From NCBI GenBank assembly GCA_964270895.1, contig OZ185453.1: DNA of 64,000 bases. One strand, written 5' to 3'. The position numbers and the translations under genes were made by a program. The notes below the pieces were generated by a model. That model was not told where the DNA came from. It was given only the letters and a program-made list of their open reading frames with translations, and did not search any database. This document shows, piece after piece, positions 13,400 to 59,500 of this stretch (positions are counted from its first letter, which is position 1; every line of letters starts with the position of its first letter). This DNA is from Podarcis filfolensis. Taxonomy: Eukaryota.

Positions 13400-39295
<25,896 letters not shown>

Positions 39296-40710
39296 AGGGC
39301 ATCCCCTGCTGTCCCCTCTTCCTGCCTGCTCCACAGCCTCCACCTGAACCCCCAGCCAGTCAGCCGCCCCTTTGTGTGGAGGAAGATGGAACCGCTGAAA
39401 GCACATTTCATACACCACGGGGCTGGACTCTTGGGGTGGAGGACACAGAGGCTCAAGTGAGGGAGCCCCAAGCAGGGGCCATCGCTGTGCCATGCCATGC
39501 TATGCCATGCCATGCCCCAGCCTAGGGAGGGGGAAGAAGGACTGGAGTTCCTCCCCTGCCCCCTGCTGCTGCCCCGTTTAACATGGACGCTGATGTTAGG
39601 GGTGGGTTTGGAGGGGGAAATTGTTATGGGGGGAGGGGGGCTGTTGGGTTTTTTACAAGTTGCAGTTACAGGAATGAAGTTCTTTTTGTATACCCCAGCA
39701 TCCTGTGTCTTGGGGGTGGGAGGGTTATTCTCCCTGCCTCCATTTCTTGCCTCTGTACAGACCCTCTCCCTCAGTTTAGTTTTTAGTGTCTGCGTTGGTA
39801 ATGGAGAGAGAGGAGTCTCTACTGTTTGGGAAGGGAGGGAGGGGCGGGAGGTGGTTGGACCACCAATGCAGCTACTTTTGGGGGTGGGTGGGGGGATGCA
39901 GCTCATTCTACAACAGCTGTTCAAATGCTCAGCCCAGGGCGCTTGTGGCTTCAACCCACCCCCTCTTCTCTACACATGCAGCAATTCCTCTAACAGCACA
40001 AGCTGATTTTTCCCTCTGCTCTTCCCTCTCCAGACCACAAGGCGGCATGTCTAGGCAAAAATGCTTAGCCATTCCTCTCCATCGTTTTATATAAAACCCT
40101 TTTTAGGGGGGAGGGGGAGACATTTTGGAGGGATGGAACCTGACCCCACAAGGTCAGGGTGATAAGCTAGGAACAAGACTGCTGGACAATACTTTTGCCT
40201 GTTGAAGTACAGCTTTCCCTCTGGCTGGGGCAGGGATCCAGGTTTCCTCCCACTCCAAAGGACTATGTACACCCCCTCCACTCGCTGCCTCTCTGGACAT
40301 TCCACAGAGGGGAAGGGAGAAGAGCAGTCAGGGCTTATTCTTCAGAGATGGTGGGGAATAGGCTATAAAATGAAAAGCAAACAGCTGCACTGACTGCTAT
40401 GTCCTACCTCTCCATTGTCAAAGAGATTTGGCAGGTAAAGCAGGCCCCCTCCAAAAAATAGCAAACAAACCCAGGAGCAGACCCCCTTCCCCACCAACTT
40501 GCTCTGTGCCCTGGTCTTTTGTATTATAATGTATTTCGCTGTGTCCCCTTCCTGTTCAGACCCTAAGATCCTTCCTGCCCTCCTCTCCTACCCCATTTAT
40601 TTTCCTTTGAGACAGGAACAGTCCTCCTAGGAGTTCCCCATGGCTGTCCACCCCTCCGCTCCCCCTCACCCTAGTGCTGCGTATCTGTCGTTTTTGTGCT
40701 ATTTTGAAGA

Positions 40711-40716
40711 ATTAAA
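40711..40716 (+). terminator. Candidate HCFC1 polyadenylation signal (ATTAAA)
   Basis: First AATAAA/ATTAAA-type hexamer I found after the stop, about 1.4 kb downstream, followed by a T-rich tract. Confidence 0.45.
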
Positions 40717-40889
40717 GACCTCCTTTTTTTGGAAACCAGGTTCTGTCTGTGAAACTAGATCTTTCCCTCATCCTCTTCTAGCACTAGGGCGTTTCTGGCT
40801 ACCTTTTGGGAGAAGATCCCTCTTACCCTCGTGGGAGGGCTGGGACACAAGTGTTTTCACCATTGAAAAGCACAATATTGGCATTCAGC

Positions 40890-40895
40890 TTTATT
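40890..40895 (-). terminator. Candidate polyadenylation signal of the RAB7-like gene
   Basis: tttatt on + = AATAAA on -, about 240 nt past the stop. Confidence 0.5.
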
Positions 40896-41131
40896 TCCAT
40901 GTGCTTGGGAAGAGTAGCCTGGGATATGATCCAGCTCTCCCAAGTGCTAGGCTGTGTCATCCAGAGAACAAAGGTCTGCCTTGGGATCCAGCTCCAGAAG
41001 CTGTGTGCTGCAGCCTTGCCAAATGTCCTTGGGGCTGTTCTGTGGGGTTGCACTTTCACCCTTCGGGATTGCAGAGCATGAAGAGCCCACCCCTTAGACA
41101 GAAGGAATCTCCCCATCTGTATTTGGTCAGA

Positions 41132-44100
41132 TCAGCAGCTACACCTCTCTCTGGTTGCCCCTTCTGGTGGCCTGGTCTCCAGGTGAACTGAGTCCGGTTG
41201 TGGCTCTTCAGGTACCCTCCGCTGAGGTGAAACAAAAAGAAAAGTGGTGAGGGGGCAAGTGGTTGATGCAGATGGGCAGAGGGCATGAGATGCAGGCTGT
41301 TGGGAAGGACTTTGTCTTATAAGAAAGTTGAAAGCTGGGAGAGGTGTTTTTGTTTTTAGGGATAAAAGCAATCACAAAGGTATGTGGTCTGTCGGGGCCT
41401 TATAAGGGCAGGGCTGAAAATGAGGTTTCTTACATTCTTTAGTACGGCCCGTATGGCCCACTCAAACACCTCCTGCACGTTGGTGGCTTCCTTGGCGCTG
41501 GTTTCAAAGTATTTGGCTTCATGAAGCTTGCTCCACATTTCTGCTTCCTCAGAAGACACCTGGACAAAAACAGGGCTTGGGCATACTCTGCTCTCTTCCC
41601 AATTCCATCTGCAGCTCTTAATCAAAAAGCTTGTGGTCTTTTTAGTGTACATAATGAGAGCAAATCTTTAAGATAATATAATTCTTCCCCAGATACCAAA
41701 TTCTACATCTCTGCTCGACAATTATGCCAAAGTCCTCTGGTGAAGCTGTTCATTAGGATACAATATTCCCTGAACTTTCTGTCCACTCCCCGTCTCCTTG
41801 AGTCGTTGCAAAGAGTTCTTACAGCCCCCTAACAGAACCCCTAAAGAGTTCTGACCCCTAACTACTCCAACCCAATATGTCTGAGAGCCATACAGGATGT
41901 GGACTTGTGCCCTGCGCATGGCTTCATATGGAGCCCTACCCAGTGGCAGACTTTGGGCTTTAAAATTTCAGCAGTGCACTGTGCAATGCCAAAATCTGGA
42001 GGGTGGGGGTGGCGCCTCTCGCCTTCCGCTGTTTGCTATTGTTGCAGGGCCCCCTTAGCTTGGCAGCCAGTGTGGGTGAACCAGTGGCACTCCCCTAAAT
42101 CCACCTCTGCCCCACCTCACGGTTCTCCAGGTCCATCTTGTTCCCAATGACAGCAGTGGGGAAAGTGGGCTCTTCCTCTGGCTCAATCTGCAACAGGAGC
42201 TGCTTGTGCCACTTCTCCAGGGCTTGGAAAGAGCTGACGGATGTGACATCGAAGACGAGAAGGCAGCAGTCTGACCCCCGGTAGAGGGCAGTCCCCAGTG
42301 CTTGGAACCTTTCTGTACCAGCTGTGTCCCAAATCTAGGTGCAAGAAGGGATAGAAGCTGAGACCTTGATTTCAAGACATCCCTGGGTCCTTGGTGACTT
42401 GCCTCCATTAATCTTGGTTCTCACAAAGGTTAGCAAGCATAGGTTTTGTCGTCTGGGGGCATCAGGGGATACCATGCCAAATGATGGTGTGGACTAGAGT
42501 CTCTTGTTTCTTTATTCAATTGATGTTCTGGATTCTTCCACCATGTTTGACCAGGGTTGAGTGGCTGCCACAATTCTGCCAACAGCGAACTAATCTACAC
42601 ATCAGAATGTATATAATACCAAATGGCTATAAAGAGATGGAGAGCTGAAGGGGAGCAGCTTTCTTGAACCCCATCTCCCCAGCTACATTGCTGGGAGTGC
42701 AGAAGAATGATCCATACTTATACATTTCAGGTGCCAGCTGCCCATTGTGACTGGCACCCAGAAAACGAGTGCTGTGGTGTGCTGTTTTGCCATAAAAGTT
42801 GGCAATCTTGGATTAAACCAGCAGCCAGAAAAAGTACTGAATTAGATGGGGACTGCAGCCCTGTCATGTTGAATGTTGCTTCCTATGATTAGTGGAAACT
42901 GACAATTGTGCAAAATGAGAAACCACAGGAATATGCTTCCCACAAGCTGCTGAATTCAGCTTTGTCACAGAACTTGGGTCTGCGTGGTGCAGTACTGTAC
43001 ACGGACACGACTACTTTGCTATATGGGTTAGAAGCCTTTTCTCAAGCCAAATTGGCTGCTAGCATTGTAAAGGATCTTTGGGGTGGGGGGGGGCCTATCT
43101 TGGTACATGCACTTTGATCAGGAGTGTTTGCTGTAAAGGTGCCTTTTCTGCCATGCTCTTGATTTTTTTTTCTTTTGCTTTTTTGAATGGATGGTGTTTA
43201 ATTTTGCCCTGTTGGTATGGCACTGGCCATCATTATTGTCTATGAATTGATAAAACTTTGCATGGAACAATTGATAACATGATCCCAAAGAATGATCTGA
43301 ACACATGTGGTGTAAATTCTTCTCAGCTTGAGGCTAACCTGGTCTAGCTTTGTAAGTTTTTGCATAGATAGAAGATCACTTTGGAAGCCATATGGTAAGC
43401 TCCTTACAGGAAGGGCCAAGTGTAGGTGCGTTTCGTTGACCTTGCAGCCCAAGGGAGAATTGTGTTAGTTCATGAGAGTTGGGCCACTGCATATTTGGGA
43501 CTGCAGCAATATTGGAATTTCAGTTTTTTAGTTGTGCATATTGCTTCTGTACAAATCGGGGAACAAGAAATGGAAATAAGAATTCAGCATTGTCATTAAC
43601 ATTAATTCTAGAAGGGAAAGGGTGTTTGCTTTAACTAAGAACTGATTTTTAGCAAATAGCTAGAGTCCACGTTGTAATATGCTCGTGGCACCGCCCCCCC
43701 CCCCCCCGGGGCATGTCTCATGGTGACAGGCTTTAGTCCACAAATGCCTGTATCTTATTGACTCTCTTAAGGCTGCCACAATAAAGCTAAAACAAGGCAC
43801 TTGTAACGAAACATAGCAGATTTGGGGTGCTCATACTGAGGGGGCCAGAGGACCCCTTTTCTAGAACATTCTGTTCCATTTTCCTGTATTTTATTTGCCA
43901 CCACAATTGTCACTGAGCACAATCGTCAATCCACTTGCCCATTTTAGATTCTCTTCCTTACACACAAACCTTTAAATATTTTCCTGAAATAGGTGCTTGT
44001 ACAGAAATTGGATCCCTGCTACTGCTCCCTCCATCTTGTGCATGAAGGGTGCCATTCTGTCCACATAAGGCACATATAGGATAATTTTAGACCTGGCGTG

Positions 44101-46523
44101 GGGAACTTGTGGCCTCCAGGTGGTGTTAAGGCTCCCTCCAGTCTCAGCCAGCATGGCCAATGGCTTAGGGATTATGGGAGCTGGAAATGGAGTAGGTTGC
44201 TAAAATTGCCCTAGGCTGGAGCACAGGGTTTTTTTAATGGGTAACATGGGATGAGCTTACGGGGCGATCTTTGCCCAACAGTGAGCCTCTGCTGAGCCTA
44301 CCTGCACGGTCAGTTTGCGTCCATCAATGTTTACTTCCTTGCTGAGGAAATCTGCTCCAATGGTGGCTCTGTAGCGACTGCTGAAGCGGTTGTTAACATA
44401 CTGGTTCATCAGGGCAGATTTGCCCGCCCTGCGGGGAACGGAGAAGGGTTGACATTTTAAATTTGGAGGTCTAGTCGGTAACCTCCCCCCCACCCCGCCG
44501 CCTCATCAACCAGCACAGGGCTGCAGAGGTGGAGCTGATTCTCTGCTCCTGAACGGCCTCTTGCACACATGCACACAGCCTTGTGATAAAGCCTTTTTGG
44601 TGGCAGCAGTGGGGAATCCCACGGTAAGATGGCGAAGGCCTTTTGAGTAGCAGTCACTGGGGCACAGCAGCAGGACGGGAAGGTCTGGTGATTTGCTTGT
44701 CGCCTTCTGAGGAATATCTAGTTGGCTACTGTAGGAAACACGCTGCGTGAGGCTCAGTTGGCCTTTTGAGTACAAAGGTTTGAAAAAGGCATAAGGAATG
44801 CCTGATGCAACTCCAAAGGCAGAATAAGTCATCTTGGTAAAACATGCTTAAAATCAAACAATGGCAAAAGCATATCTTGCATCAAAATGCTTTGGCATTG
44901 CATGTACAAATTCTCCAGAAGCCTTTTCTGATGGTGCCCTTTTTTTACTTGGGTCACTTTTGTACAAAGCTTTGTGTTTGACTGATTTTTGTCTTAATCA
45001 TTTCAAACAACTGACATGGTTTCAAAATGATACTCAGTGCTTTGCATGCACTGTGTCTGGCAGTGTTTGAGCCCTACTCTTCTTGTATGTTTTTCTTCAC
45101 ATTTGGTAGATAAAGGTTAAACCTAACTATTTTACTTTTTGGCATAAAAGGTAAATGAGAAATCTTAAATCCTCATTGCATTGGACAGTTGTATGCATTC
45201 ATAATATCTTAAACACATACTAAGGCCCCTTTTGAGTTTAGATACAGATAATGGAAATAACCAAATTATTTTACTCAATACATAAAAACTACACTATGTT
45301 TAAATAATGGTTATAAAAAGTTGAAGGTGAGTGTTAATTATAATTATACAGTAAGGTTTATTACTACACTGCCATAAAGCTGTGGTTACTTAATAAATTA
45401 GTTGCAACAGCAGCTGCTACCAGGCTCTTCAGAGTCAGGTTGATGGGGGAAGGTTAAGCAAGCACATTTTTCTGAGTATTTTGATGTACAGGTGTTTTTG
45501 TTAACACTTGTGAAGTTATGCTAATTTTCCAAGCATGCTGGACTAGAGGGGAAGCTGAATAAAAATGCAGTAAGTTCTCATGTTCCATTTAGCTCCCCAT
45601 GACTAGCAAATGCAGACTTGCAGCTTGACCCTGCACCTGTCTACTCAGAGGTAAATCCCACTGAGTTCAAGAGGGTTGTACTCCTGCAGTCTAAATTATG
45701 CAACATATTTAAAATGGCAAAATAATGTGAAGAGAACAAATCACAGTTGTGCATAAAACATACAGGCTGCAGGTTTTTCTTTTCTTAAAAAGCACCTTTT
45801 TATTGCATCGATGCTCTCCGGGTTCAGGCAATGGTAATACCACTGTGTCCATAGGATAATAGTCACTTGACTTGGCCTCTAGTTATTTGGTGTTGCCTCT
45901 TCCATCTGCTTTAATTCTGGGAACAAACAGCTGGTCTAATACAGCTGCGCCCCACAAAATTGTCCTGTTCTCAGCTGCCTGTGGTACACACGTGGTCCCA
46001 CTTGCTGCAGGTACTTTAAAGGACTTTGAAGGAGGTGGGACAGGAGAGCGGCGTGCAGCGCGCCGGGATCTCGCTGCCCGTGCGAAGCAGAGACTTAGTA
46101 GGCGCTCGGGGAGCGAATCAAGAAGACTTCTTCAAGTGGGCGCCTCGCTTCCCAGCCTGGGCTACAGAGGATACCGCGAGGATGGTTGCGGAGGCAGCAG
46201 AGCCTCGCGGAAGTTTCTCCCCGCGCGCGTTGACCGGGCTGCACCGGACGGGCTGCACCTGCCCCTGCCCCTCGCGGCGCCGCCCCCTCCGCCCCGTCCA
46301 CCTGCCGCCTTAACCCCTCGGCTGCCAAACGGGGACAGGATCCCCGGAAGCCTTCCTCTTCCCGCCAGCCGGGAGCCCCGACACCCGCTTAGCCGCCGGA
46401 GCCCGGCCGGGGGGCGAGGAGGGGCCAGCTCTCCCGGCGGGCCTGCCTTCCCCATCCAGGCGCCCCTTGTGCTTACCCGGAATTGCCGATCAGCAGGATC
46501 TTGAGGTGGGAACGTCTGAACAT
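41132..46523 (-). CDS. RAB7A-like small GTPase (divergent Rab7 paralogue), 5 coding exons, 202 aa
   Basis: complement(join(41132-41221,41434-41559,42116-42334,44302-44428,46477-46523)). Exon sizes 47/127/219/126/90 have the RAB7A phases (RAB7A exons 127 and 219 are identical in size). Protein: [202 protein letters not shown]. Open frame, canonical splice sites, CXC prenylation motif. Confidence 0.9.
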
Positions 46524-46950
46524 GGGGCGTCTGCGCCAGAACCTGCGGAGAGACGGGCGGGTGAGGGCGGCGGCGGCGGCGGAGCAGCAGCCCTACGGGA
46601 GCAGCTCTGGAGCGGGAGCCTCCGTCGAGACCCCCCCGCGGCCAGGCGTGTGGGGGTCCCCTGCTCAGTCCGCGGGGCGGGCGCCCGGACCTCGGCCCCG
46701 AAGCCCGGCCCCGGCCGTGCGCCCCCCCGAGCCACCTCGGCGCGGCACAGCCTCCCTCAAACTGCCTCCGAAGAAGGAAGGGCGCTGCTTGGGGCTCCTG
46801 GCAGCTGCTGGCTCTCGCCCTCCTGGCCGGCGCGCCTTCCTGCCGGGCTTCTCGGCGCCGGGGAGGAGGAAGGGCGCGGGGCTGCGCCTTCCGGCCACGC
46901 TTTCAGGTGAGGCCGGTGGGATCCGGCTTGTGCCCAGGCGAAGCAAGGAT
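46040..46950. promoter_or_regulatory. CpG island over the RAB7-like first exon and promoter
   Basis: Very high CpG density with GC boxes around the ATG at 46523. Confidence 0.75.
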
Positions 46951-49549
46951 CGTGATGGAGAATCTCATGTCATAGTTAAGTCAATCTTAATGCTTATTAA
47001 GATCTACAGAAATAAACCATAGAAATCAGATCAGATTCACACACCTGTTCACAGGTGCTATTATCCTCACAACAGTTCTGCGGAGATTGGTGCTGGGCGC
47101 TTCCAGGAAACGTCGCCCTTGACCCTTAACCTAGTCTTGGAACCATGGGGGGGGGGGACGGGCATGCAGGGTCCGCATCGTGGGGCATCTGCTGAGGCCC
47201 ACAGCCCTCCCTGCAGGGCCCTCCCACCCCACTGCAACCCCCTGCTTTGCTGCCCCTCTTTGCCACCCCTTCACCAGCAATCGGAGGGAGTGGCGGCCTG
47301 GCCCGGGTCCAGAAGGGAAGGCGAAGTGAGCAGGCGGCAGCTGCACAGGAGGGGGGAGAGGAAGCCCAAGGTGCACCCCCCCCGGCTGTGCTCATCCAAG
47401 CGGTGGGAGAAATAAAAGGCACCCTGCCCATGCTCAGATACAAGCACATACGGGTTTTAACAAACCATTCCGCGAGTGCTGTGAGCAGGTTCTGCTGCTG
47501 GCACAAACTAAGTCTTCTTCAGCCCTTAGCGAGTGCCTGCCAACTCTCTTGTTGGGCAGCCCTTTCCCTTCCTGTCTGATTCTGAAACTGCATTCGTATA
47601 TTCCTTCATTTTCATTTCATATAATAAACCAAGCTTTGTTAATGTGTGTCTCAAGACTCTTAATGTACAGCTATTTGTTTGCCTCTAAAAAATATTGGGT
47701 TGCCCATCTGGCATTTAAGAGGTCTTTAGGATCGCCAGCTCAGGACAAAATTAAATATTAGGTGTCAGGAGTTTTATTTAAGCAGGGATAGAGGCAAACA
47801 CATATTCGTAAATGGGTACACATTATAACTCTAGCAAAAGATTCTAAATCTTGGGGGGGGTATGAATACATGTGAGTGCTGGACATGCATGTGAATTCAG
47901 ACATATACTGTAACACAGTCTGGAATGCCATATTAATACCTGTTTTTGATGTGTGAGGAATGCCTTGAGAAGCACTGACCCTGGAAACCTAGCTTGGCTC
48001 AGTTCTGGAACAATCCGAGGTTGCCCCACCCCCACCCCACAACCTTCTGCCAATGCTGTGTATTCTCCTCACTACTAGGTAGCTAAATGTGCTTCTGTAC
48101 ACCTGGAATGTGGGGAAAGGTTGAATCTTAGAAGAACAATATGTGCATTGTTATATAATTAAGGTTAAGTGTAGAAAGGCCATGGAGCTTTATAAAGCAT
48201 TACATATGGGAAAACCCAGGGACCAGGCAGGCCCTGCCTCACAGAATTTGCAAACTACATTTTGATCGTAGGGGAGACCACAGAGGAACAGTTAAGGATG
48301 CTCTAACTACTTTCAATGTGTCCTACACACAAGAACTTCCCAGATAATTGTGCACCGTATTAGTTAGTGTGTGATGGTTATTTGGTGCTGTTTAAGGCAC
48401 ACAAATGTGTCTTGTGTGCACCATCATGTGTGACAAATGTGCATGGATCTATTTTGCCACATGTGCACATTCATCCAGTGAACGGGGCAGAGGATAGTGA
48501 GTGACCTCCCTTGCACCACAGCACGTGTACAAGCCTGCATGGGAACATAGATGGGGGGGGGGGGATATCTTGGTAGACCACCTGCCTTTCCTTGGATGTC
48601 CAAATGCAAAGGAAGTAGGGTGAACAGAAAGGAGGACCGCTATTCCTTCACCTTTAATTGTTGTGCAGGTAATTTCAGCCAGAGCAGCTTGTTGTGTAAG
48701 CTACATCTGCTGCATTTCCCTTTTCTGCACCACTGTTAAAAGAAGCTGGAGCCACAGGCACCGGTTCCACCCAACTTGGTGGGGGGCAGAGCAAGCACAT
48801 GACATCATGTGCACAACATGCACATGTGATGTCACACAACGGGAGGAGGCCACAAGGCCCAGTGCAGCTACAGACAGGCTGGGTGAGGCCCTTCGTAGGC
48901 CACAGAATATTGAGAGTCTGGCCCCTCTGAAAATTTGGGGGGAGGGCTTCAGCCCCCCCAGATGGTGCCCCTGGCAGGAACCCAGTCCTCTTTTTACACG
49001 GCCTCCTCATGGGAAGACAAGCCTCTTGCATCTTTAAAAGTTGCATAAAAGAAGGGGGGGCCTGGTGGGGCAGTTTGTCCTGCTGCGGGGCTGAGAAAAG
49101 CTCAGTCTGCATTCTTTTTATTTGCACAATTGCCTTACCTGACACATGTCCAATAGACCACTTTTATTTGTAGAACTGGCACTGTGGCAGGTGCTACATA
49201 ATACTCATTCCACAGTTGAAAGAAAAATCAGTATTTTAGTGCGGCAGCAACTACACTTTGGAACTCCCTGCCTGTTGCCTATTGATAACAGGCAGCCGCC
49301 TTTACTGCACTTTTTTCAGTACCTGCTAAAAACATTTTTGCTTTGGGAAAGCCTATCTAGACATGTAGAAGTTACATGTTTTGATATTTTGTTGCTGATA
49401 ATTTTAATCACCTGCTTATCCTTCTTTGTTTTTATTGATACTTTTAATGTTTTTAAAACTGCTTAGAGGTTTGACTGCAATCAAGTGTTATATAAATGCT
49501 GTTAAGTAAAATAACAGCAACTAAATTCCTGCTTTCAGCTAAGTGTTAA

Positions 49550-50560
49550 AGACACGCGAGGCCTCCTTCGCATGGAGTCGCCCCCCAGCTCCGAAACGTG
49601 GCTCTGAAGTAAGTAGGAGAGAGCAGGGGGTCCCTCCCCACCTCCCCCAGATTGGCAGCAAGATTATTTGGATGCCTCGGCACCTTGCTGTGGTATATAT
49701 TTGAAACGAGCCATGTGGTCCTAGAGGGAAAGCACACGCACCGCCCTCTCTCTCCAGAGCTCACCTGGGACGGGGGCGGCAGCTGATGGGTTTTGCTGCC
49801 AAGGGGGATTCCTCCCCTGACGTACGAGCGGGGCATCCTAATAGCGGTGACATCACGCAGCCGCCTTTGGGGTCGTCCCTGCTCCCCGTCGCCCCTCGGC
49901 CCTTCCGCTCAGCAGTCCCTCAGGAGGCAGCGGGGAGCCACCCGAGTCAGGAAGGCTTCCTGGGAGCGTTTAAATGCTTTGTGCCTCATTGCTGCCCTTT
50001 TCTTGTCACGATCACTGTTCTGGGATTCCTGCTGCCGATCTCTGGGCCGGATCACGGCAGATGTAGGGTTAACAAATGGAAACAGAGGAAAAGGAACAAA
50101 TCAGGGTCTTCGCCCCCCCACGTGGGGAAAGGGTGGGGCTAGTGTCAGGTGACTTGGGCAAATCATATGACCAGCAGTTCCCTACTTTGTAAATTTTTAA
50201 GTTTTGGGGGGTGGGCGTTGTACGTGGTTTTATGCTAGTTTCCCGCGGACAGCGGCAGCGCGTTTCGGGACTCTCCCCTCCCCTCTCGGGGTCGGATCCT
50301 GGGACGGGCTGACTCTGCTGATCCAGAAACACCTTCGCGCCCCTACAGGGATCGCCGCTGGAGGAAGCAGCGAGGATGGAGTTGGCGTCGCTCTTGAGCT
50401 GGCATGGACGCATCTCCCGAGAGCTGGACGCCGTGGTGGATTTCTGGCTTCAGCATTCGCACGACGAGGAATACGGGTGATGGATCGCTGCCTGTCTATT
50501 CATCTAGGCCCCCCCCCCGTCGCCCCAGGGCCAGCCAGCGTGGGTTGTGGCTGAGGGGGC
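49550..50560. promoter_or_regulatory. CpG-rich RENBP promoter / 5' region
   Basis: CpG-rich segment ending at the first coding exon. An acceptor-like cgcgcccctacag| at 50348 just upstream of the ATG suggests a 5' non-coding exon. Confidence 0.5.
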
Positions 50561-53500
50561 ATTTGAACACGGCTCTCCCGCAGTCCAGTCCTGTACCTAC
50601 CACACTGACTCCCTCTCACGACATGGGGGGGAGGTTATGTTTATAGTGATGCTATACAGGCCATTAAGGAAATCGACCCAAATGGGGAGGGGGAAGAGGG
50701 TATGTGAAACAGGGGAGCCCTTCCCAGAAAGGGGGGGGGGGTGGAACATACCACTGAGATGCGAGGAGATACTTCCCCTTCCCTCCCCTCACGTGGCCTG
50801 AGGCAGACAAATCTACCCTCTAATGCAGGGGGGAAGGGACCTCTGACTTGGCAACCCTTTTCATTTAGCCCACTATTTTCGGGAGGCTGTGCCCACCTGA
50901 CTCACACGTGACGTCATGCATGACTTGAAAGCAACCACCCGGAGCTTAGGGCTCCCTGTTGCTCCTTGGACCAGCATGGATGACATTCCACTGGGAAATT
51001 CTCCTCTGCAAGCTTCATGGAAACAAATGTGAGCTGTGGGCAAGATGCTGCTGTCCCCAGATATGCTCTCCTTCCATTTCTGTGGGCTTGCGGAGAAGAA
51101 TGTCCTGGCAGATGGTGCTCTGTGAAGCAGATCTGCCTGCCCTCTTAAAGGCATTCCACGTTTTCTGCGCCTGCTTTAGCTCTAACTCCTGACGCTGCCA
51201 GAGGCAGCTTCCTGTCTTACTTCTCGCAGGCCAGGGCTGGGGGAATCTCCAAAACTCCTTGGACTCCAACTCCCACCCCCCCCCCCGGCCATTTGCTGTG
51301 CTGGCTGAGGGGCTATGGGGAGCCCCACTCAGCCACGCCCCACGACAAGTTCCTCTTTAGTCAGTAGTTCTCTGCCCGGCCTGCTTTCATCCTTTCCTCT
51401 AGGAAATTGTGCCCCCCCTCCTGGTTCTCACCCCTGCCTCTTCTTTCTCTCTAGGGGGTTCTTTACATGTCTGGGCCAGGATGGGAAAGTTTATGATGAC
51501 TTGAAATATGTTTGGCTGCAAGGCCGGCAGGTAGGGGTCCTCAGGGGCTGTGGATTTTGGAAATTTTTTTAGATTTTCTGTTGGGATCACCTTTGTGTGG
51601 TTGGGGCTGGGGTGGGAAATGAGGCTGGGGAGGGCCAGCTTCTCTGAAGCCAGCCAAGGCTTGATTGGAACCTGGCTTGCCTGGAGTTGGCCTCAGAATC
51701 TGGTTTCAGTGCTGGCCTTAAAGCTTGGAATGAACAGGTAAAGCAAATTTAATAAATAAATGGCACAAGTCTCTCTGAGCATGTGCAGAATGCCTCAACA
51801 CTGCAGCTCCCCCATCAGTCCCCCATATTGGGAACGTTTTTGCACGAGGAATTTCCAAGCCAGCCTGAGGTCCAGCACCTGTCTCCTTAAGAACAGGCCA
51901 GGCCTGCGCATCACTGTGGAGAGCCACGCTCACAGCTCATACCCTGAATGGCAGGCATCAGTGCCGGGGCTTAAGCCAAGGAAAGGAAAGGTGTGGCCCT
52001 CCAGGAACGGATGGAGTCCAATTCCCATCATCCCTGACCACTGACCTTGCTGGCTGGGGCTGATGAGTGCTGGAGTGAGCAAGTGTCCTCATCCCTGGCT
52101 GAGCCAAGGCAGATGTCTGCCATGAGACTAGAGGGCCCAGGTTACCTCTCCATCCCTTCCCAAACAGGTGTGGATGTACAGTCGGCTGTATCGAAAAGTA
52201 CCAAGATTCCGGCGCCCTGAACTCCTGCAGGCAGCCCGAGCAGGTAACTTCTTCCACCTTGTGTACAGAAGGGATGGGATTTGGGAATGAAGGCAAAGAA
52301 GGGATAATATTGGGTGGGCAGACAGAGGTCTGTGGTGTGTGGACTGGGGCAGGGAATTGAGATGAGGGCTGAGAGACTCTTGAAAGTTCTGATACTTTGG
52401 AATGGTGGTGGGATTATAGGGGTTGTCCCCCCACAATTAATCATCATCACAATCTAATCAGTTAGCCTTTTCTGTTAACTGAGTACTCCTTGTATGGTAA
52501 GCCATTCCGCCCCCCAAGAGTGAGCCTGAGGCAGAGAGATTTTGCCTAAGGCCACCTACTGCGCCTGTGGGAGAGGGGCAATTTGTACTGGGGCTTCCCA
52601 ATTCATAGCTCAATCCCTGCTTGTGATCAGTTGGAGAAAGTGTAAAAAGTTGGTGGGGGGTCTTGGCCCAAGTGCTCTGGGTATTTGGTTGCCAGTAGCA
52701 GAGAGGGGCAGAGCTGCCTTCCTCCAAATCTATTTCTTTCTCTGAGGTGGGGAGTTCCTGTTAGAGCATGCGCGAGTGGCCCCACCATCACAGAAGTGTG
52801 CCTTTGTCCTGACTCGTGATGGGCGCCCTGTGAAAATCCAGCGCACCATTTTCAGCGAGTGCTTCTATGTCCTTGGGCTGGATGAACTTGGACGAGCAAC
52901 TGGGGAACCTCGTTACCAGGTGAGGTCAGGAGAGCTGGATACAGATGTCCTGATTGCCTGCCTGCCTCCTTATATGAACAGTGGGCATCTAAACCTGTTT
53001 ATCCTCCTTCTCTTCTCCCTCTGATTATTACCTCAGCAAAAATACCCTTTCCCCAAAGCTATGGTACAGCTCCTAGCACATGGCTGATAAAACCGCAGCT
53101 GTAGGGTTGGGCCCAGAGTGGAGAGACCAGCTCATTTTACCTCATGGTGCTGCGGTTGAGGCACGTCTTCCTGTCTCTATGGATACTGGAGTTCCGTTGA
53201 TAGAACTAGAAGAAGAATAGCCATCATCTACATAGAGGAAGAGGCTGGTCAGCTGGTTGAGTCTGCTCTTGTGTAGGGTTAACCCTTGTCCAAAGTACTG
53301 GTCCATGGGAGGTGCTGTGAACCTCTGCTCCCCCAGGAGGCAGTGATGGCCACCAACTTAGATGGCTTTAAAAGAGGATTAGACAAATTCTTGGAGGAGG
53401 CGAGGGCTATCATTGCTCACTAACCATGATGGCTCTGCTCTGCCTCCGTAGAAGAGCGCTTAAGAACGGAAGAGGAGCCCTTCTGGATCAGACCAAAGGC

Positions 53501-56500
53501 CTACTTCATCCTTATCCTCTTTCCCACACTAGCCAACCAGATGCCTTCAAGCAACACATGAGAGCGACCCTTTTCTCTTGGGTAGTGGAACTCTACTATA
53601 ACGCATATCTCTGTTGGTTGGAGGAGTGCTGAGTGGTTGGTTGTTGGTCATCTCTCTGGCTTCTTCACTTGCTCTCTCTCACCCTCCCTGCCGATCAGCC
53701 GTGATGAAGCCTGAGCAGTGAGCAAATGAGTTTGGCCAAGGCCTGCTGAGTCCCTTGGAGAAGAGGGAAACCTGACTCCAGGCATGGATGTTGTGGGAGT
53801 GAGACCAGCCCTAGCCTTAGGTTTCCACTTGGCTAATGGGTATTTTCGTAGATTGTAACGATGTTCCTGTTGGCAGAGGGAAGCCCTGGCAATGATGGAG
53901 GCCATTGTGCACTGGGTGAGGGAGGATCCCTCTGAGCTGGGACGCCCACTGCTGGCGGGGGCAAGCCCACATGACTCCATGGCTGTTCCCATGATGCTCC
54001 TCAACCTGGTGGATCAGCTGTCAGAAGGAGATGCAGAGGCTGCAAGCCGGTTCAGTGAGCTGGGAGGCTGGTCTGCTCAGCGAATCCTCATGCACGTGCA
54101 GGTAAAGGGGTGGGAATGGTCGGCCCCCCCTGCCCCTTAGTTTTGCTTTTGTCTTCGTTTGGTATGTTTTAGAATAGAATTCTTATTTCGCTACAGAGGG
54201 ATGGTGCTGCTGTGTTGGAGAACGTTTCTGAAGAGGGTGAGGAGTTGCCAGGGTGTTTGGGAAGACAACAGAATCCTGGTAAGAAGAGACCAAGAGCCAG
54301 GATGCTTTGGGAGTCAAGTGCAGCAGCGTATATTTTGCTGAGGAATTTCATGTTAGCCAGAACCCCAGGAATCTAGATTTTTAGCAAACAAATTTCTAGC
54401 CTGTTTAGCAGTAGAGCAAAGTTTGAAAATATCTCTGTCAGACCCACAGGTTAGGGTCCTGAATGAAGAGTTGGGCTGGTGTATACATTGCACTCCATTG
54501 CTGGGAGATTTGTAGCTCTCCAGATGTTGGATATCAACTCCCATCAGCCCCAGCCAGCAGGGCCAACAGTCAGGAACGATGGGAACTGTACTCCCAGCAG
54601 CACCTCAAGGTCCACACATTCTCCAGCCCTGTATTGCACAGGATCAGGTGGTGGAACTCTGCACTGCACCACTGTAGATTGCAGGGGCCATATTTTTAAT
54701 GTAACTAGTCATGGGCTTAGCCAAGAGGGGACAGGGAGGGGCAGCTGCCCCCAAAATCAATAAAAATCAATAAAACTACATAGCTAACTGAGGTTCTGCC
54801 CCCCCCAAACAAAAATCCTGGCTATGCCCAACTAGTTCAGATTTTGCCAGCCTGGTATGTCCTGCCCCCACCATAAGACATAGGGGCCGAGGCGATTTTG
54901 ACATCCCCCCAATGTCAGCCCCCTCAATTTTCAGAGGATGTTTTGCTCTGCCCCCTGGTTCTTGCAATGTTGCACAACGTTGCATCAGGTCCCCTCAATC
55001 CTCTGGAGAAGCCGGCGCCTCTGCACCAGAATGTTTTGGACTACAATTTCCATCAGCCCCAACCAGTATGGTTTTGCTGGCTGGGGCTGGGGCTGGGGGG
55101 GTGTTGGATATTCCAAAGTATTTGGAGGTTGCCAGGTTGGTGGGGGTTGGCACGTCAGGGCTACTGTTAGCCGTGCTCACTTGCTACGTGCAGGGAGTCT
55201 TTACATGGAGCCTTCAAAAGTACTACACCGTTCTCTGCAGTCTGAAGTGGTGCAGCCTAGATAGCTACCCTCTCATACTGCAAAGATTGGCACCTAGACC
55301 CTGGCACATATCCTTACTAGCATCCCTGCCTCCACAGCCCCCTTGCCCCTTGTGACAGTCTTCTTTCTCCCATCCCCAATTTATGCAAGAGAGAGAGAGG
55401 CTGCTCAGCTGGGAAGCAGGAACAGTTTCACAGAGTCCCCATCCTGCCACCAGCAGGTGCAAGCCAGTGGCGTGTAGGGGGCTCCATAAAACTGCCTGGC
55501 TGAGCAATGGCAGATGTATGCTTCTCAACCAAGCAGTTTAAAGAAGTGAAGGGAGGAACAAGCTGTATTGGCCCCTCTCCGATGCAGCATGTTTCTCCCT
55601 CTGCGCCGGTTTGAGGGCAAAGTGGGATGGCAGCTTCACTCAGCAGGATATCGCTGGTGAAACTGCCGCTGCCCCTGAGTCCCTCTGCCTCCAGTGCCCG
55701 GCTGCAGCTTGTTTCTCCCTTGGCGCGCTGGGCACTGGTGGCTAAGGAACTGAGGAGGAGGCTGTTTCACCTGTAATATACCACTGAGTGAAGCTGCCAT
55801 TGCTGTCTGCCCCTCATACCGGTCCTGGGCGATGTATTGATGCATCACCCAGGCCTACTGGAGATGGAGAGGAAAGGTGTATCAAAAGGAAAATGAATTG
55901 ATAATGATTTTTATATATTAGTAACTTTGTATTACTGTAACATTTCTGTATGTGTGTTTTTGTAATATTTTGTGTATGTTGTCTGTTGTTATGTCAAATT
56001 TCTGTCTACTTATTAGAGATATTTTATATATATTAAGTGATATAGAAATAAAATAACCAATCTGCCTTGGGATGGGGTGGGAGCCATTTTTTCCTGTCAA
56101 GGGCTGCATTTCCTCAGCATTCTCTGCCGGGAGCTGTGTGCCAGTGCTGAGTGGATGGATCACCCTCCCTCCTTCCCTCCCTCCGCCCCCTGCATGGAAT
56201 TAGTCTGAGGGCAGTAGGTTGCCTGCCCCAGAACTCTGAGCCAGCACTGGGGTGTTTCTTCTCCATTTTTGTTTCTAAGGCCATGCGATTGAAGCAGGCT
56301 GGTTCCTGCTCCGCTACGCGCAGCGCCAGCAGGACTCGGACCTCGTGGCCCAGGCTGTGGAGAAGTTCATGAAGGAGCCATTCCGTCTGGGCTGGGACCC
56401 TGAACATGGTGGACTCTTTGCCTTCCAGGATGTGGATGGCCTCTGCCCAACGCAGGTACAGAAGCTTGGACCCTAAAGCCTACATTCACCATGCATTTGA

Positions 56501-59500
56501 CAACTGCCCTCCTCCTGGGATCTCTTGGGTTGTTCCCTCCCACCCCCCAACTTTCCCCTCTTTCTTCTTCAGTTAGAGTGGAAAATGAAGCTTTGGTGGC
56601 CACACACAGAAGCCATGATTGCATTTCTGATGGGCTTTGCTGAGACTCGAGACCAAGAGCTCCTGGAACGCTTTGTCCAAGTGGCTAAATATGCCTTTGC
56701 CAAGGTAAGCTTGAAGGCTGGCCATGGAGGGCAGGGGGTGCCATTAAGTTAGAAGAGAGGTGGTGAGATGAGGTTTGAAGAAAGTGCATTTCCTGGTCAA
56801 AGGCTCTGGGGGCTGGGAAAGAAGCGGTGCCCGAGACCTTGCAGAGCGGGGTGCTGCTTGGGTGCAGCCTAAGGCAGCTTCCACTGGTCAATATGGTGAC
56901 CGTCAGCTTCCTAACCTATGGGAGTGGCACCAGGAACCTAAAACCCCTCCATAGCTCACATCTCACACTGTAGATCGTCTTATAATCTGATATGCATATT
57001 GTTTCACCATCTTTGCTTGTTCTTCTCTTAGTTCAGTGACCCACAGGCAGGTGAATGGTTTGGCTATCTGAGCCAGGAGGGCAAGGTGGCTCTCACAATC
57101 AAAGGAGGGCCATTCAAAGGTAAAGAGGCTGTGTGGTGGCTTAATTGTGACGGTTGGGGAGGGGGGGCAGTAATAAGATTTAATCTGAGCAAGAATGTCA
57201 GCAAGGCACACCTGCAAGGCCTTTTTCCAGTACTGAAGCTCAGTGGTAGAATGCAGAGCGCAGTGTAACAAGAGTGGCTCTAGAATGTGTGTTCACTTTG
57301 CTACTGATAACCAGCACCCACTCACAGCTACCTAGAATTAGCAGTGCGGGCAGAAAGAGACAGCAGCATATACCTGCCTCAAGTAAATGCTCTCTTGGGA
57401 TCACCTGCTGCTTTTGGAATAAAATGACATGCTTCCCCTATGACCAGTCTGCCCTTATGCATCCATAGGGCTTTGAGGGGGAAACTACTACTGCCCTGTT
57501 TGAAGTGTTAATGCTTCTATAGCACTATCAGCATGCAAAACTTGTCAAGGACATTGAGGGAGAATTGCAATATCCCCATTAGGACTGCAACTTTTTCAGG
57601 TTTTACAACTATTACTCTTGTTTTCATAGGCAACCAACGTGCTCTTGATTTAAGTGCTATTTGTTTATAACACATCTAGATTATTTATGAAAGCTAAAGA
57701 TAGCAGGCCCCATGGCTCAACTCCTCACACAGGAAGGAATGCCTCTTTTTTAATTAACTTATTTATTGATATTTGTTAATAGATACTACAAAAACACATA
57801 CCCATTACAAAGTACATTTTATAATATACTAAGACAGCTACTTAGTCTAAAAAAGAACGAAGTCAGAAAGGAGAGACCTGAAAAACGAAAAAGGGAGAGA
57901 AAAGGGGAAGAAAGGAAAAACTACAGAACTATAGAAAAGAGTAAGAGGACTTCTGTCTCTCTGTCCTGCAGCTATATATAATATTTATTCCTTAAAATCC
58001 AACCATCCTATCTTCTATATACCAGTATTTTTTCAGTCTTCAGATTCTGACAAGTTCATTTTCTCTTTCATGCAAAAAGTCCTTAAGAAATTTCCAATCC
58101 TTAACAAATGTAATGATTTTTCTCTAATTAAAACATGTTAACTTTGCCATCTCAGCCAGATCCAATAATTTCATCAGCCATTCTTCTATAGTGGGTAGGA
58201 CTATCTTTTCATCTTTGTGCATATAGCAGTCTTGTTGCTGTAGTCATATATTGGAGTAATCAGGAATAAAGTTAAGGAACTACTGGTGGAATTTCTGGAA
58301 AAGGAGGCTAGAAATATGGAAGCAGAATTGGATAAAATTTATAGAATCAACACACTACGAAAAAATAAACTTCCAAGAGATGTCTTGGTCCAATTTGTTA
58401 GGATAAAAAACACCTAGAGACGATACAGATTTGACTGTGCTGAAAGAAATTCCGTCTAAGATACTACATAAAAGAAAAGAATACAGCTTAACAGATAAAC
58501 TTAAACAGAAAAGAATCCAATTTAGATAGGATGCAGCAGAAGGATTCTGACTTAATACAGTACAGAGAGCAAGAGAATTTGTGGAGAGATTTAAATTTGA
58601 TATTAAAGATATGCAAATGGAGGAGACTTAAGATGCAGCAATGGGAGCATCAAGTATAGAGGTGACAAATTAACTTGACTGACTATGGATTACAAAATTT
58701 TAACATGGAATATAAATGGGGCAAATGCTTCACAAAAGAGGAAAAAGGTATTTTATCACTTGAATATAGTGAAATTAGATTTAAGATGTTCACAAAAAAC
58801 ACTTATTAGGAAAAAGGACACAAAATATTTGATTCAAAAGAAATTAGGGGAAGAATGTATTTCTGCAGGAACAAAGAAAAGAAATGGAGTTATATTGTGT
58901 ATATACATTCCCAATTTTGTCCAAAATTGATTCTTTTGGATGAACAAGGTAGATTTATTGGGGTGGAAATTAACATTTGTGGAAAAATGATTTTGGATCT
59001 AGGTATATATGCTCCAAATGATAACAAATCAGCTTTTTATAAAGGATTCATGGATAGACTGAGGGATTATGCATATGAAAACTGGTGCCTTATGGCAGAT
59101 TAGAATGCTCCCCCCACCACAGACAAGGCAGGAGTCAGAGAAATGTATTTTGCAGCCTGTTGTCTAATGTGGATAAAGGAGTGGTTGACATGGAGAAGGG
59201 AGAGGACTTTAGAAATAGGACATGACCTAAGGTTTGGATGGCATGGATATCTGTGATATAATAAAGTTAAAGTTAATGTAGATTTTAAAAATCACTGTAT
59301 TTGAACTGCCATATTAAGAATTTGGAATAAATGCAAACCTAGGTTGCACCAAAAGACACCTGTATGGATTTCACCACAAGAAGTTTTTCACAGAAAAGAG
59401 ATGACAGGCAAAGGGAAATGGATAACATACCACAAAATAATGGAAACACCTCAGTGAGATGGGGGAGCCTCTTGAAGCAAAGCAAGTATGCTTCCCCCAA

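What the first reader, a model, noticed from the sequence alone, without database searches (positions are those of the whole stretch)
41132..46523. Intact extra Rab7 paralogue between HCFC1 and RENBP, absent from the human locus
Seen: a complete, cleanly spliced 202-aa Rab with its own CpG island and poly(A) signal. Known: human HCFC1 and RENBP are neighbours with no Rab gene between them. The protein has RAB7A hallmarks ([37 protein letters not shown] tail, intron phases) but is too divergent to be RAB7A, and does not resemble RAB7B (TTLGASIL, CC tail) or RAB9. Inference: RAB7A lies on human 3q21, which has known paralogy with X-linked blocks (GATA2/GATA1, RHO/OPN1LW, PLXNA1/PLXNA3). This may therefore be a whole-genome-duplication ohnologue of RAB7A kept in squamates and lost in mammals, i.e. 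an uncharacterised endolysosomal GTPase.
Basis: partly seen in the sequence, partly recalled or inferred. Interest (0 to 1): 0.85.

Follow-up and report, generated by a model that had tools for sequence, protein, structure and literature searches.

The report
Lizard copy of Rab7c GTPase
This is a real, expressed gene for Rab7c, an old and barely studied sister of the lysosome regulator RAB7A; sharks, fishes, frogs, lizards and platypus keep it next to HCFC1, placental mammals do not appear to have it, and its usual catalytic glutamine is always a threonine.

Summary
A five-exon, 202-aa Rab gene lies on the minus strand (ATG 46523, stop 41132). All splice sites are GT-AG. It has its own CpG island and an AATAAA signal. 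All four junctions appear in RNA contigs from four studies of two related species.

The gene is not a recent RAB7A copy, and it does not fit RAB7B or RAB9. It belongs to a clade with full support (100/100) whose branching follows the species tree from sharks and rays to lizards.

That clade contains the two sequences named "Rab7c" by Mackiewicz and Wyroba in 2009 (PMC2693434), so the family is already named. NCBI also annotates it, as "Rab-7a-like".

It was not kept only in squamates. Platypus has it in the same RENBP | Rab | HCFC1 slot. No therian, bird, turtle or crocodilian copy turned up.

Points that looked unreported in the papers I could search:
- Amniotes retain it, although the 2009 paper assumed amniote loss.
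- Cartilaginous fishes have it.
- Gln67 to Thr is invariant (DTAGTERF in 33 of 33), together with T22S and F77L.
- Selection is strongly purifying (dN/dS about 0.08-0.10).

A whole-genome-duplication origin is plausible but unproven.

The parts
46477..46523 (-). Coding part of exon 1 (ATG at 46523; [16 protein letters not shown], split codon, phase 2)
   Evidence: The joint 44428/46477 is in RNA contigs of four runs. The MFRRSHLK start is conserved from caecilians to squamates (listing).
44302..44428 (-). Exon 2 (127 nt): end of the P-loop (GAGKS), switch I (YRATIGADF) and strand beta-2/3
   Evidence: Pfam Ras 5.5e-10. It is 100% identical to Podarcis lilfordi. Joints on both sides are seen in RNA.
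42116..42334 (-). Exon 3 (219 nt): switch [10 protein letters not shown] through the G4 motif NKMD
   Evidence: Pfam Ras 2.2e-20. Best PDB match is RAB7A at 94 bits, against RAB9A at 75 bits.
42314..42316 (-). Codon ACA = Thr65, at the position of the catalytic Gln67 of RAB7A
   Evidence: Thr is present in all 33 Rab7c sequences and Gln in all 19 Rab7 sequences compared. The codon is unchanged in the RNA contigs.
41434..41559 (-). Exon 4 (126 nt): G5 motif ETSAKEA and the C-terminal helix
   Evidence: The donor at 41434 was fixed by the RNA joint 41221/41434. Pfam Ras 3.9e-07. No differences from the RNA contigs of relatives.
41132..41221 (-). Exon 5 coding part: hypervariable tail, the CSC prenylation motif and TGA
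   Evidence: A CxC end is seen in nearly all full-length clade members.
40862..41131 (-). 3' UTR with AATAAA at 40895-40890
   Evidence: The signal was found. RNA contigs of runs X2 and X13 end at 40878 and 40862.
45750..47000 (.). CpG island over exon 1 and the promoter
   Evidence: GC 0.54-0.76 and CpG observed/expected 0.78-0.84. The first conserved RENBP coding exon is about 3.8 kb away at 50322.
15000..40700 (+). HCFC1, the convergent (tail-to-tail) neighbour (approximate extent)
   Evidence: fn3 hit at 35874-36320. Exons at 35355-36320 are 85-94% identical to the downstream gene in platypus, gar and medaka. Podarcis and Zootoca annotate Kelch_HCF proteins here.
50322..60305 (+). RENBP coding exons, the divergent neighbour
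   Evidence: tblastn shows collinearity with platypus RENBP. Pfam GlcNAc_2-epim 4.2e-08 at 56279-56473.

Best explanation
The window, from a lacertid lizard close to Podarcis, carries the squamate orthologue of Rab7c. Rab7c is a Rab7-subfamily small GTPase that split from RAB7A by a DNA-level duplication before jawed vertebrates radiated. It has stayed next to HCFC1 ever since.

Shown here:
- The gene is intact, spliced and transcribed in close relatives, and under strong purifying selection.
- The protein keeps every nucleotide-binding motif (GNSGAGKS, T of switch I, DTAG, NKMD, SAK), the C83/C84 pair and a CxC geranylgeranylation end.
- Every member differs from Rab7 at a fixed set of sites: I13L, T22S, K32R, K38R, Q67T, F77L, V85L and I149A.

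Inferred mechanism:
- It probably works as a prenylated, membrane-bound GTP/GDP switch on endolysosomal membranes.
- With Thr in place of the catalytic Gln (the Rap-type arrangement DTAGTE), intrinsic GTP hydrolysis should be slow. Inactivation would then rely on a GAP that supplies catalytic residues in trans, as TBC RabGAPs do.
- Three changes point to a partner set different from RAB7A's: Leu at the third residue of the hydrophobic triad (F77L), His at RabSF1 position 8, and an unrelated tail. RILP-type binding in particular is unlikely.

The gene appears to have been lost in therian mammals, and probably in birds, turtles and crocodilians.
For: - Gene model and RNA: 202 aa, GT-AG at all introns, and all four junctions in RNA contigs from four studies.
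- Orthology: 96% identical to Zootoca and about 98% to Podarcis (4 of 202 residues differ). The window is collinear with Podarcis L006 at 92-97% identity.
- Clade: Rab7c is supported 100/100. Cartilaginous fishes are basal, followed by ray-finned fishes, then lungfish, amphibians, and monotremes with squamates.
- Link to the literature: both 2009 'Rab7c' accessions are inside the clade.
- Synteny: RENBP | Rab7c | HCFC1 in platypus, Zootoca, Podarcis, Pogona and Varanus. Rab7c | HCFC1 in Xenopus, gar and medaka. The same kinase neighbour appears in ray and gar.
- Gene structure: exon lengths are conserved from gar to lizard. Intron positions and phases are identical to medaka RAB7A.
- Selection: dN/dS is 0.08-0.10 between lacertids and Pogona or Varanus, and 0.06-0.08 in the G domain. 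In RNA contigs of relatives, exons differ at about 0.9% and introns at about 3%.
- Fixed substitutions, including Q67T in 33 of 33.
- TBC GAPs use Arg and Gln fingers in trans, and the hydrophobic triad and the Rab7 C-terminal region determine effector and RILP binding (PMC5902227).
Against: - No experiment or localisation data exist for any Rab7c. The endolysosomal role and slow hydrolysis are inferred from sequence and by analogy. The Rap Thr61 analogy and the RILP contact residues come from my own knowledge, not from a tool.
- RAB7B and RAB9 sequences could not be put in my trees. Their exclusion rests on PDB scores, on discriminating sites from the 2009 paper, and on Rab7b and Rab7c coexisting in Xenopus tropicalis.
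- The position of the clade relative to invertebrate Rab7 is unresolved because of its long stem (0.67-0.77).
- The RNA runs are from related species, not the window's own, and their tissues are coded.
- Absence from therians and archelosaurs rests on a top-120 list.
Confidence: 0.85

Rival explanations
1. It is a recent, lineage-specific duplicate or retrocopy of RAB7A that arose within squamates.
For: RAB7A is the best match among solved structures. NCBI names the lizard proteins 'Rab-7a' or 'Rab-7a-like'.
Against: - Identity to RAB7A is only 50%.
- The gene has four introns, so it is not a retrocopy.
- It groups at 100/100 with shark, fish, frog and platypus proteins, and vertebrate RAB7A forms its own clade.
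- The same HCFC1-linked locus is found from gar to platypus.
Confidence: 0.01
2. It is the non-mammalian orthologue of mammalian RAB7B, as UniProt's automatic name 'Ras-related protein Rab-7b' for many clade members implies.
For: UniRef names many clade members Rab-7b. No true RAB7B sequence could be fetched for my trees.
Against: - The 2009 study lists separate Rab7a, Rab7b (NP_001096381.1) and Rab7c (NP_989167.1) genes in Xenopus tropicalis. Each has its own syntenic neighbours.
- The sites that study gives as Rab7b-specific are not present here: Asp at position 8, Thr at position 42 and a one-residue deletion at position 115. The window protein has His and Ala at those positions and no gap.
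- Tail: CxC here.
Confidence: 0.04
3. The gene is transcribed, but the protein is a degenerating or catalytically dead pseudo-GTPase, because the catalytic Gln is lost.
For: - Q67T removes the canonical catalytic residue.
- The clade evolves much faster than RAB7A: its stem is 0.67 and its tips are long, while RAB7A branches are near zero.
- The gene has been lost in several amniote lineages.
Against: - All nucleotide-binding motifs and the prenylation motif are kept.
- 49 columns are invariant across 33 species, and Thr itself is invariant, which points to selection for Thr rather than decay.
- dN/dS is 0.06-0.10.
- Rap GTPases work normally with Thr at this position (my own knowledge).
Confidence: 0.07
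4. On origin only: Rab7c arose by a small-scale or segmental duplication in an early vertebrate, not by the 1R/2R whole-genome duplications.
For: - In medaka, RAB7A (3.64 Mb) and Rab7c (26.35 Mb) lie on the same chromosome record, CP020669.1.
- The tree does not resolve the node.
- No paralogon analysis could be run here.
Against: - Timing fits 2R. Rab7c is present in cartilaginous and bony fishes, and the only hagfish sequence that came up is RAB7A-like.
- In medaka a GATA1/2/3-class gene sits beside Rab7c. This mirrors the GATA2-RAB7A linkage on human 3q21 and the X / 3q / 1q32 paralogy, both from my own knowledge.
- The 2009 authors also proposed a 1R/2R origin.
Confidence: 0.25

Closest known systems
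Rab7c (Mackiewicz & Wyroba 2009, BMC Evol Biol 9:101, PMC2693434), defined from Danio rerio NP_001013496.1 and Xenopus tropicalis NP_989167.1
   Same: The window gene falls in the same 100/100 clade as both accessions. It shares His at 'position 8', which the paper gives as Rab7c-specific, and it shares conserved local synteny. The paper also proposes a 1R/2R origin at the base of vertebrate Rab7a.
   Different: The paper knew only two sequences and assumed the isoform was lost in amniotes. Here it is present in squamates and monotremes, and also in cartilaginous fishes. The paper does not mention the Gln-to-Thr change.
RAB7A (late-endosome and lysosome Rab; PDB 1VG8, 1T91, 1YHN)
   Same: It is the best match among solved structures: 214 bits full length and 94 bits for exon 3. 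All four intron positions and phases are identical. The switch I sequence, the C83/C84 pair, the G4 and G5 motifs and the CxC tail are shared.
   Different: Identity is only 50%. Fixed changes are Q67T, T22S, F77L, K38R, K32R, I13L, V85L and I149A. The RabSF1 residue L8 is His, and the C-terminal tail is unrelated. The clade evolves much faster and sits at a different locus.
RAB9A/RAB9B
   Same: Same Rab7/Rab9 functional group. RAB9A is the next-best match among solved structures at 194 bits. The motifs YRGSDCCLL and EVSxEEA resemble RAB9.
   Different: The Rab9-discriminating residues given in PMC2693434 are Asp, Phe and His at the positions aligned to RAB7A S34, K38 and A39. Here they are Ser, Arg and Ala, which is Rab7-like. 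The score is lower than for RAB7A.
Rap1/Rap2 (Ras-family GTPases with Thr61 in DTAGTEQF). Own knowledge, not tested here.
   Same: The same Thr replaces the catalytic Gln within DTAGTE.
   Different: A different family (Ras, not Rab), with different GAPs (RapGAP supplies an Asn in trans) and different lipid modification. The resemblance is at one motif only.
Atypical Rabs lacking the catalytic Gln (Rab24 Ser, Rab25 Leu, Rab20 Arg). Own knowledge.
   Same: These Rabs also have a non-Gln residue at this position and are reported or presumed to hydrolyse GTP slowly.
   Different: They belong to other Rab subfamilies, none of them has Thr, and none is a Rab7 paralogue.

Membership tests
Rab family of small GTPases | Ras-type G domain with the P-loop GxxxxGK[ST], switch I Thr, DxxG, NKxD and SAK motifs | tested here: met
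   The motifs [24 protein letters not shown] and TSAK are all present. Pfam Ras hits exons 2, 3 and 4.
Rab family of small GTPases | C-terminal double-cysteine geranylgeranylation motif (CXC, CC and similar) | tested here: met
   The protein ends in CSC. A CxC end is seen in nearly all full-length clade members. Prenylation itself was not tested.
Rab7 subfamily | Closest similarity to Rab7/Ypt7 rather than to other Rabs | tested here: met
   PDB scores: RAB7A 214 bits, RAB9A 194, Ypt7 177, and other Rabs 119 or less. For exon 3: RAB7A 94 bits, Ypt7 82, RAB9A 75.
Rab7 subfamily | Gene structure shared with RAB7A | tested here: met
   The four introns are at identical alignment positions with phases 2, 0, 0, 0. 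Exon lengths are 47/127/219/126/90 here and 53/127/219/129/96 in medaka RAB7A.
Rab7 subfamily | Catalytic Gln67 in WDTAGQERF | tested here: not met
   Thr is present in the window and in all 33 clade members. Gln is present in all 19 Rab7 sequences.
Rab7c clade (PMC2693434) | Monophyly with NP_989167.1 (Xenopus tropicalis) and NP_001013496.1 (Danio rerio) | tested here: met
   Both accessions were identified. The clade has 100/100 support.
Rab7c clade (PMC2693434) | His at alignment position 8, where other Rab7/Rab9 groups have Leu | tested here: met
   The window has H6 aligned to RAB7A L8. The clade consensus is 'hLK'.
Rab7c clade (PMC2693434) | Its own conserved syntenic neighbours | tested here: met
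   HCFC1 lies tail-to-tail in window, Zootoca, Podarcis, Pogona, Varanus, platypus, Xenopus laevis, gar and medaka.
RAB7B | Asp at position 8, Thr at position 42 and a one-residue deletion at position 115 (PMC2693434 section 15) | tested here: not met
   The window has His and Ala at those positions, and no gap against RAB7A in that region. No RAB7B sequence was available for a tree.
RAB9 | Asp, Phe and His at consensus positions 37, 41 and 42 (PMC2693434 section 15) | tested here: not met
   The window has Ser32, Arg36 and Ala37 at the aligned positions.
2R ohnologue of RAB7A | Duplication node after the invertebrate split and before the gnathostome radiation, on paralogous chromosome blocks | tested here: inconclusive
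   The gene is present in Chondrichthyes and Osteichthyes. An all-vertebrate clade is not rejected (AU p = 0.61, lnL +2.7), but the node is unresolved. No paralogon analysis was possible. Medaka RAB7A and Rab7c share one chromosome.
Endolysosomal Rab7-like function | Late-endosome or lysosome localisation, and binding of Rab7 effectors, GEF and GAPs | not testable with these tools
   There is no experimental data. No paper in the searched library contains DTAGTERF or LOC494576.

The most novel reading that the evidence does not exclude
Rab7c is a third, functionally distinct endolysosomal Rab7-type switch of jawed vertebrates, and a 2R ohnologue of RAB7A. A Rap-like Thr has replaced its catalytic Gln for more than 400 million years. 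As a result it stays GTP-bound unless a trans-acting GAP switches it off, and it uses an altered effector surface (F77L, L8H, a new tail). Therian mammals, and probably archelosaurs, lost it independently. If so, the textbook mammalian Rab7 system is a reduced version of the ancestral vertebrate one.
Probability: 0.3. Interest if true: 0.6.

Novelty: new member of a known kind. Interest (0 to 1): 0.48.

Why it matters
RAB7A is the master regulator of late-endosome and lysosome traffic, and almost all of its biology comes from therian mammals and yeast. This locus shows that most jawed vertebrates carry a second, strongly conserved Rab7-type GTPase. The literature I could search has named it once, in 2009 from two sequences, and never studied it.

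The analysis changes the recorded picture in three ways:
- It overturns the published assumption that the gene was lost in amniotes.
- It places the mammalian loss after the monotreme split.
- It shows the family is defined by an invariant Gln-to-Thr change at the catalytic position.

That gives a clear, testable biochemical hypothesis. It also offers tractable models (zebrafish, Xenopus, lizard cells) for asking what a slow-hydrolysing Rab7 does and why therians could dispense with it. In addition, it flags a naming problem: databases call these proteins Rab-7a, Rab-7a-like, rab7 or Rab-7b.

Tried and rejected
- My first gene model used a GTACTA donor at 41446 and gave 198 aa. RNA joints showed the real donor is at 41434, giving 202 aa.
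- The spliced protein has no single reference, so I did not type it into the search tools. I searched with exon 3 by reference and then with database orthologues.
- I could not obtain RAB7B or RAB9 sequences as tool objects. All three homology searches returned only Rab7 and Rab7c proteins, so these groups are missing from my trees. PDB scores and literature-defined sites stand in for them.
- In the first tree, hagfish Rab7 grouped with Rab7c (89/90). After its spurious N-terminus was trimmed and sharks were added, it moved into the RAB7A clade (94/92). I treat the earlier grouping as an artefact.
- Four ORFs of 110 aa or more downstream of the gene gave no Pfam hit. RENBP was then found by tblastn of short ORF pieces against the platypus locus.
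- The look-up of Zootoca isoform X2 failed because only the longest product is indexed.
- PDB searches could not say whether the medaka GATA neighbour is GATA1, GATA2 or GATA3.
- The ESM Atlas search added nothing beyond 'Rab fold'.
- A literature search for Rap1 Thr61 found nothing in the held library.
- I did not run a structure prediction. A Rab fold is not in doubt, and the prediction would not discriminate between subfamilies.

Full report
**1. What is in the sequence**

The minus strand between 46523 and 41132 carries five coding exons: 46523-46477, 44428-44302, 42334-42116, 41559-41434 and 41221-41132. Every intron starts with GT and ends with AG, and the phases are 2, 0, 0, 0. The joined CDS is 609 nt and encodes 202 aa ending in CSC, followed by TGA.

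My first model used a donor at 41446 and gave 198 aa. Exon 1 lies in a CpG island: windows across 45750-47000 have GC 0.54-0.76 and CpG observed/expected 0.78-0.84. An AATAAA sits 237 nt past the stop, at 40895-40890 on the minus strand.

**2. Transcription and splicing**

Twenty-four public runs share words with the locus. I laid the contigs of four RNA runs on 40660-46640. Three were from organism A, in three different studies, and one was from organism B.

- All four predicted junctions appear as CT..AC joints, which are GT..AG on the minus strand: 41221/41434, 41559/42116, 42334/44302 and 44428/46477. Each is seen in three or four runs, on contigs with assembler depths up to 320.
- Two contigs end at 40878 and 40862, just past the AATAAA.
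- One run also shows a minor exon-2-skipping joint (42334/46477). This removes 127 nt and breaks the frame.
- The contigs are from relatives, not the window species. Introns differ at about 3% (for example 12 of 410 and 25 of 774 positions). Exons 2 and 4 show no difference, exon 3 shows one to three, and exon 5 shows two.

**3. Neighbours**

- TMEM187 lies at 4040-4921 on the minus strand (Pfam 1e-103).
- HCFC1 runs on the + strand up to about 40 kb. It has an fn3 exon, and its C-terminal exons are 85-94% identical to the downstream gene in platypus, gar and medaka.
- RENBP follows on the + strand. Its exons between 50322 and 60305 are collinear with platypus RENBP, and one of them hits Pfam GlcNAc_2-epim.
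- The window is collinear with Podarcis lilfordi at 92-97% identity, and the Rab exons are 99.6-100% identical. It therefore comes from a lacertid close to Podarcis.

**4. What the protein is**

Exon 3 matches RAB7A best among solved structures (94 bits), ahead of Ypt7 (82) and RAB9A (75). The full-length Pogona orthologue gives RAB7A 214 bits, RAB9A 194, Ypt7 177 and other Rabs 119 or less.

An exhaustive search with exon 3, followed by a named search with a snake orthologue, found a family annotated as 'Rab-7a-like', 'rab7-like' or, in UniRef, 'Rab-7b'. It occurs in squamates, frogs, salamanders, caecilians, echidna, lungfish, bichir, gar, paddlefish and teleosts. Nearly every full-length member has DTAGTERF and a CxC end. 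A search with the bichir protein added sharks and rays: Heptranchias, Stegostoma, Hemitrygon, Mobula and Hypanus.

No therian, bird, turtle or crocodilian protein is among the 120 best matches to the snake query. That list reaches down to teleosts and includes echidna.

**5. It already has a name**

Mackiewicz and Wyroba (2009, PMC2693434) named 'Rab7c' from one zebrafish and one Xenopus tropicalis sequence. They placed it at the base of vertebrate Rab7a, attributed it to 1R/2R, noted conserved local synteny and assumed it was lost in amniotes.

Their supplement gives the accessions NP_001013496.1 and NP_989167.1. Both are in this family: NP_989167.1 is P0268 and NP_001013496.1 is P0480. The His that the paper gives as Rab7c-specific at 'position 8' is present in the window protein and in the clade consensus. 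The paper does not mention the Gln-to-Thr change.

A whole-word search for 'Rab7c' finds no other animal paper. Searches for 'DTAGTERF' and 'LOC494576' find none at all.

**6. Phylogeny**

I built a 52-sequence maximum-likelihood tree (LG+C20+F+G4) rooted on Capsaspora.

- All 33 DTAGTERF proteins form one clade with 100/100 support on a long stem (0.67).
- Inside it, cartilaginous fishes branch first. Ray-finned fishes follow in the order bichir, paddlefish, gar, teleosts. Then come lungfish, amphibians, and echidna with squamates. This is the species tree.
- The window protein is sister to Zootoca (100/98).
- Vertebrate RAB7A, including hagfish, is a separate clade (94/92).
- The clade's position relative to invertebrate Rab7 is unresolved.
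- A tree that forces all vertebrate Rab7 sequences together is slightly better than the free tree (lnL +2.7; AU p = 0.61). A vertebrate-specific duplication is therefore allowed but not demonstrated.
- An earlier tree grouped Rab7c with hagfish Rab7. This disappeared once a spurious N-terminus was trimmed.

**7. Synteny and gene structure**

- RENBP | Rab7c | HCFC1, with the same orientations as in the window, is found in platypus, Zootoca (31), Podarcis (37), Pogona (38) and Varanus (39).
- Xenopus laevis has a LEM-domain gene | Rab7c | HCFC1.
- Gar has a protein-kinase gene | Rab7c | HCFC1, and a stingray has the same kinase neighbour.
- Medaka has a GATA1/2/3-class gene | Rab7c | HCFC1.
- Exon lengths are conserved from gar to lizard: 47 or 53, 127, 219, 126 and 81-93 nt.
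- Medaka RAB7A has introns at the same four alignment positions and phases. The duplication was therefore DNA-based, not a retrocopy.
- The 217-aa monotreme models carry a 16-aa insert inside the P-loop. A canonical acceptor 48 nt downstream gives an intact 201-aa protein in platypus, and echidna isoform X3 has that form.

**8. Selection and signature**

Nei-Gojobori dN/dS between lacertids and Pogona or Varanus is 0.08-0.10, at dS of about 0.6. In the G domain it is 0.06-0.08, and the tail is freer.

Eight positions are at least 90% fixed in both groups but differ between Rab7c (33 sequences) and Rab7 (19 sequences). In RAB7A numbering they are I13L, T22S, K32R, K38R, Q67T, F77L, V85L and I149A. 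Of these, I13L, T22S, Q67T and F77L are invariant on both sides.

That change is confined to some squamates. Ser is kept in Pogona, Gekko and all non-squamates.

**9. How it most likely works**

Shown: the protein has a complete nucleotide-binding apparatus and a prenylation motif, and it is under strong constraint.

Inferred:
- It is a membrane-anchored GTP/GDP switch of the Rab7 type.
- Thr at the catalytic Gln position is the arrangement of Rap GTPases (DTAGTEQF; my own knowledge). It predicts slow intrinsic hydrolysis.
- TBC RabGAPs provide Arg and Gln fingers in trans (PMC5902227), so regulated inactivation remains possible.
- F77 is the third residue of the Rab hydrophobic triad, which shapes partner specificity. 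RILP binding also needs Rab7's C-terminal helix and hypervariable domain.
- With F77L, L8H and an unrelated tail, Rab7c probably has partners different from RAB7A's.

None of this has been tested experimentally.

**10. Origin**

The timing fits 1R/2R: the gene is present in cartilaginous and bony fishes. So does the locus. The HCFC1 region corresponds to human Xq28, which is paralogous to 3q21, where GATA2 and RAB7A lie, and to 1q32, where RAB7B lies. Those map positions are my own knowledge.

The GATA-class neighbour in medaka is suggestive. However, I could not run a paralogon analysis, and medaka RAB7A and Rab7c lie on one chromosome record. I rate whole-genome duplication as likelier than a small-scale duplication, roughly 3 to 1.

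**11. Verdict**

It is wrong on distribution, because monotremes and most other jawed vertebrates keep the gene. It is also wrong on novelty, because the family was named in 2009 and is annotated by NCBI.

Four points I did not find in the papers I could search:
- Amniotes retain the gene.
- Cartilaginous fishes have it.
- The gene has stayed next to HCFC1 throughout.
- The Q67T, T22S and F77L signature is invariant.

The gene is worth a bench test. It is a new member of a known kind, not a new kind.

Noticed in passing
window 42334/46477 joint: One RNA run (X2) has a low-depth contig that joins exon 1 directly to exon 3. Skipping the 127-nt exon 2 shifts the frame, so this is probably a non-productive minor isoform.
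   Followed up: partly
window about 41560-41616; L006 (Podarcis lilfordi): The annotated Podarcis isoform X1 (221 aa) uses an acceptor 57 nt upstream of exon 4. This inserts 19 aa ([19 protein letters not shown]) between the G4 and G5 regions. The RNA contigs laid here show only the canonical acceptor.
   Followed up: partly
L001 10501-10548 (platypus); echidna P0184: Monotreme reference models use an exon 2 that is 48 nt longer, which puts 16 aa inside the P-loop. A canonical acceptor (tccctcag|GG) restores GNSGVGKS, and echidna isoform X3 has that form. The 217-aa models look like mis-annotation or a non-functional splice form.
   Followed up: yes
window 44131-44183 and 45638-45670 (introns 1 and 2): Many unrelated RNA contigs in all four runs have loose ends at these places and raise the local depth. 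These are probably interspersed repeats (SINE-like) transcribed elsewhere in the genome.
   Followed up: no
window about 39900-41221: A 1316-nt contig in run X1 runs without a break from the Rab7c 3' UTR into the HCFC1 3' region. The two convergent genes may therefore have overlapping or abutting 3' ends. The contigs are unstranded, so this is not shown.
   Followed up: no
L009 and L010 (medaka CP020669.1, 3.64 Mb and 26.35 Mb): RAB7A and Rab7c lie on the same medaka chromosome record, and a GATA1/2/3-class gene sits directly upstream of Rab7c. Both facts bear on whether the duplication came from a whole-genome or a segmental event.
   Followed up: partly
database names: UniRef automatically names many Rab7c proteins 'Ras-related protein Rab-7b', and it also names some true RAB7A proteins 'RAB7b' (for example Callorhinchus). 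NCBI calls Rab7c 'Rab-7a', 'Rab-7a-like' or 'rab7'. The names cannot be used to tell the paralogues apart.
   Followed up: yes
window 46524-46553, minus strand upstream of the ATG: The reading frame stays open upstream of the ATG, and a possible acceptor (ccgcag|GTTCTGG) lies 19 nt before it. This may explain the N-terminally extended Zootoca isoforms X1 and X2 (307 and 240 aa). MFRRSH is the conserved start.
   Followed up: partly
P0113 (Drosophila busckii XP_017844727.1): Drosophila busckii has a divergent second rab7-like protein that keeps the catalytic Gln. It is an independent insect Rab7 duplicate, unrelated to Rab7c.
   Followed up: no
window 43693-43710 and 42639: The relatives' contigs show length differences at an intronic poly-C/G tract and a 13-nt indel. 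These are ordinary intron variation.
   Followed up: no
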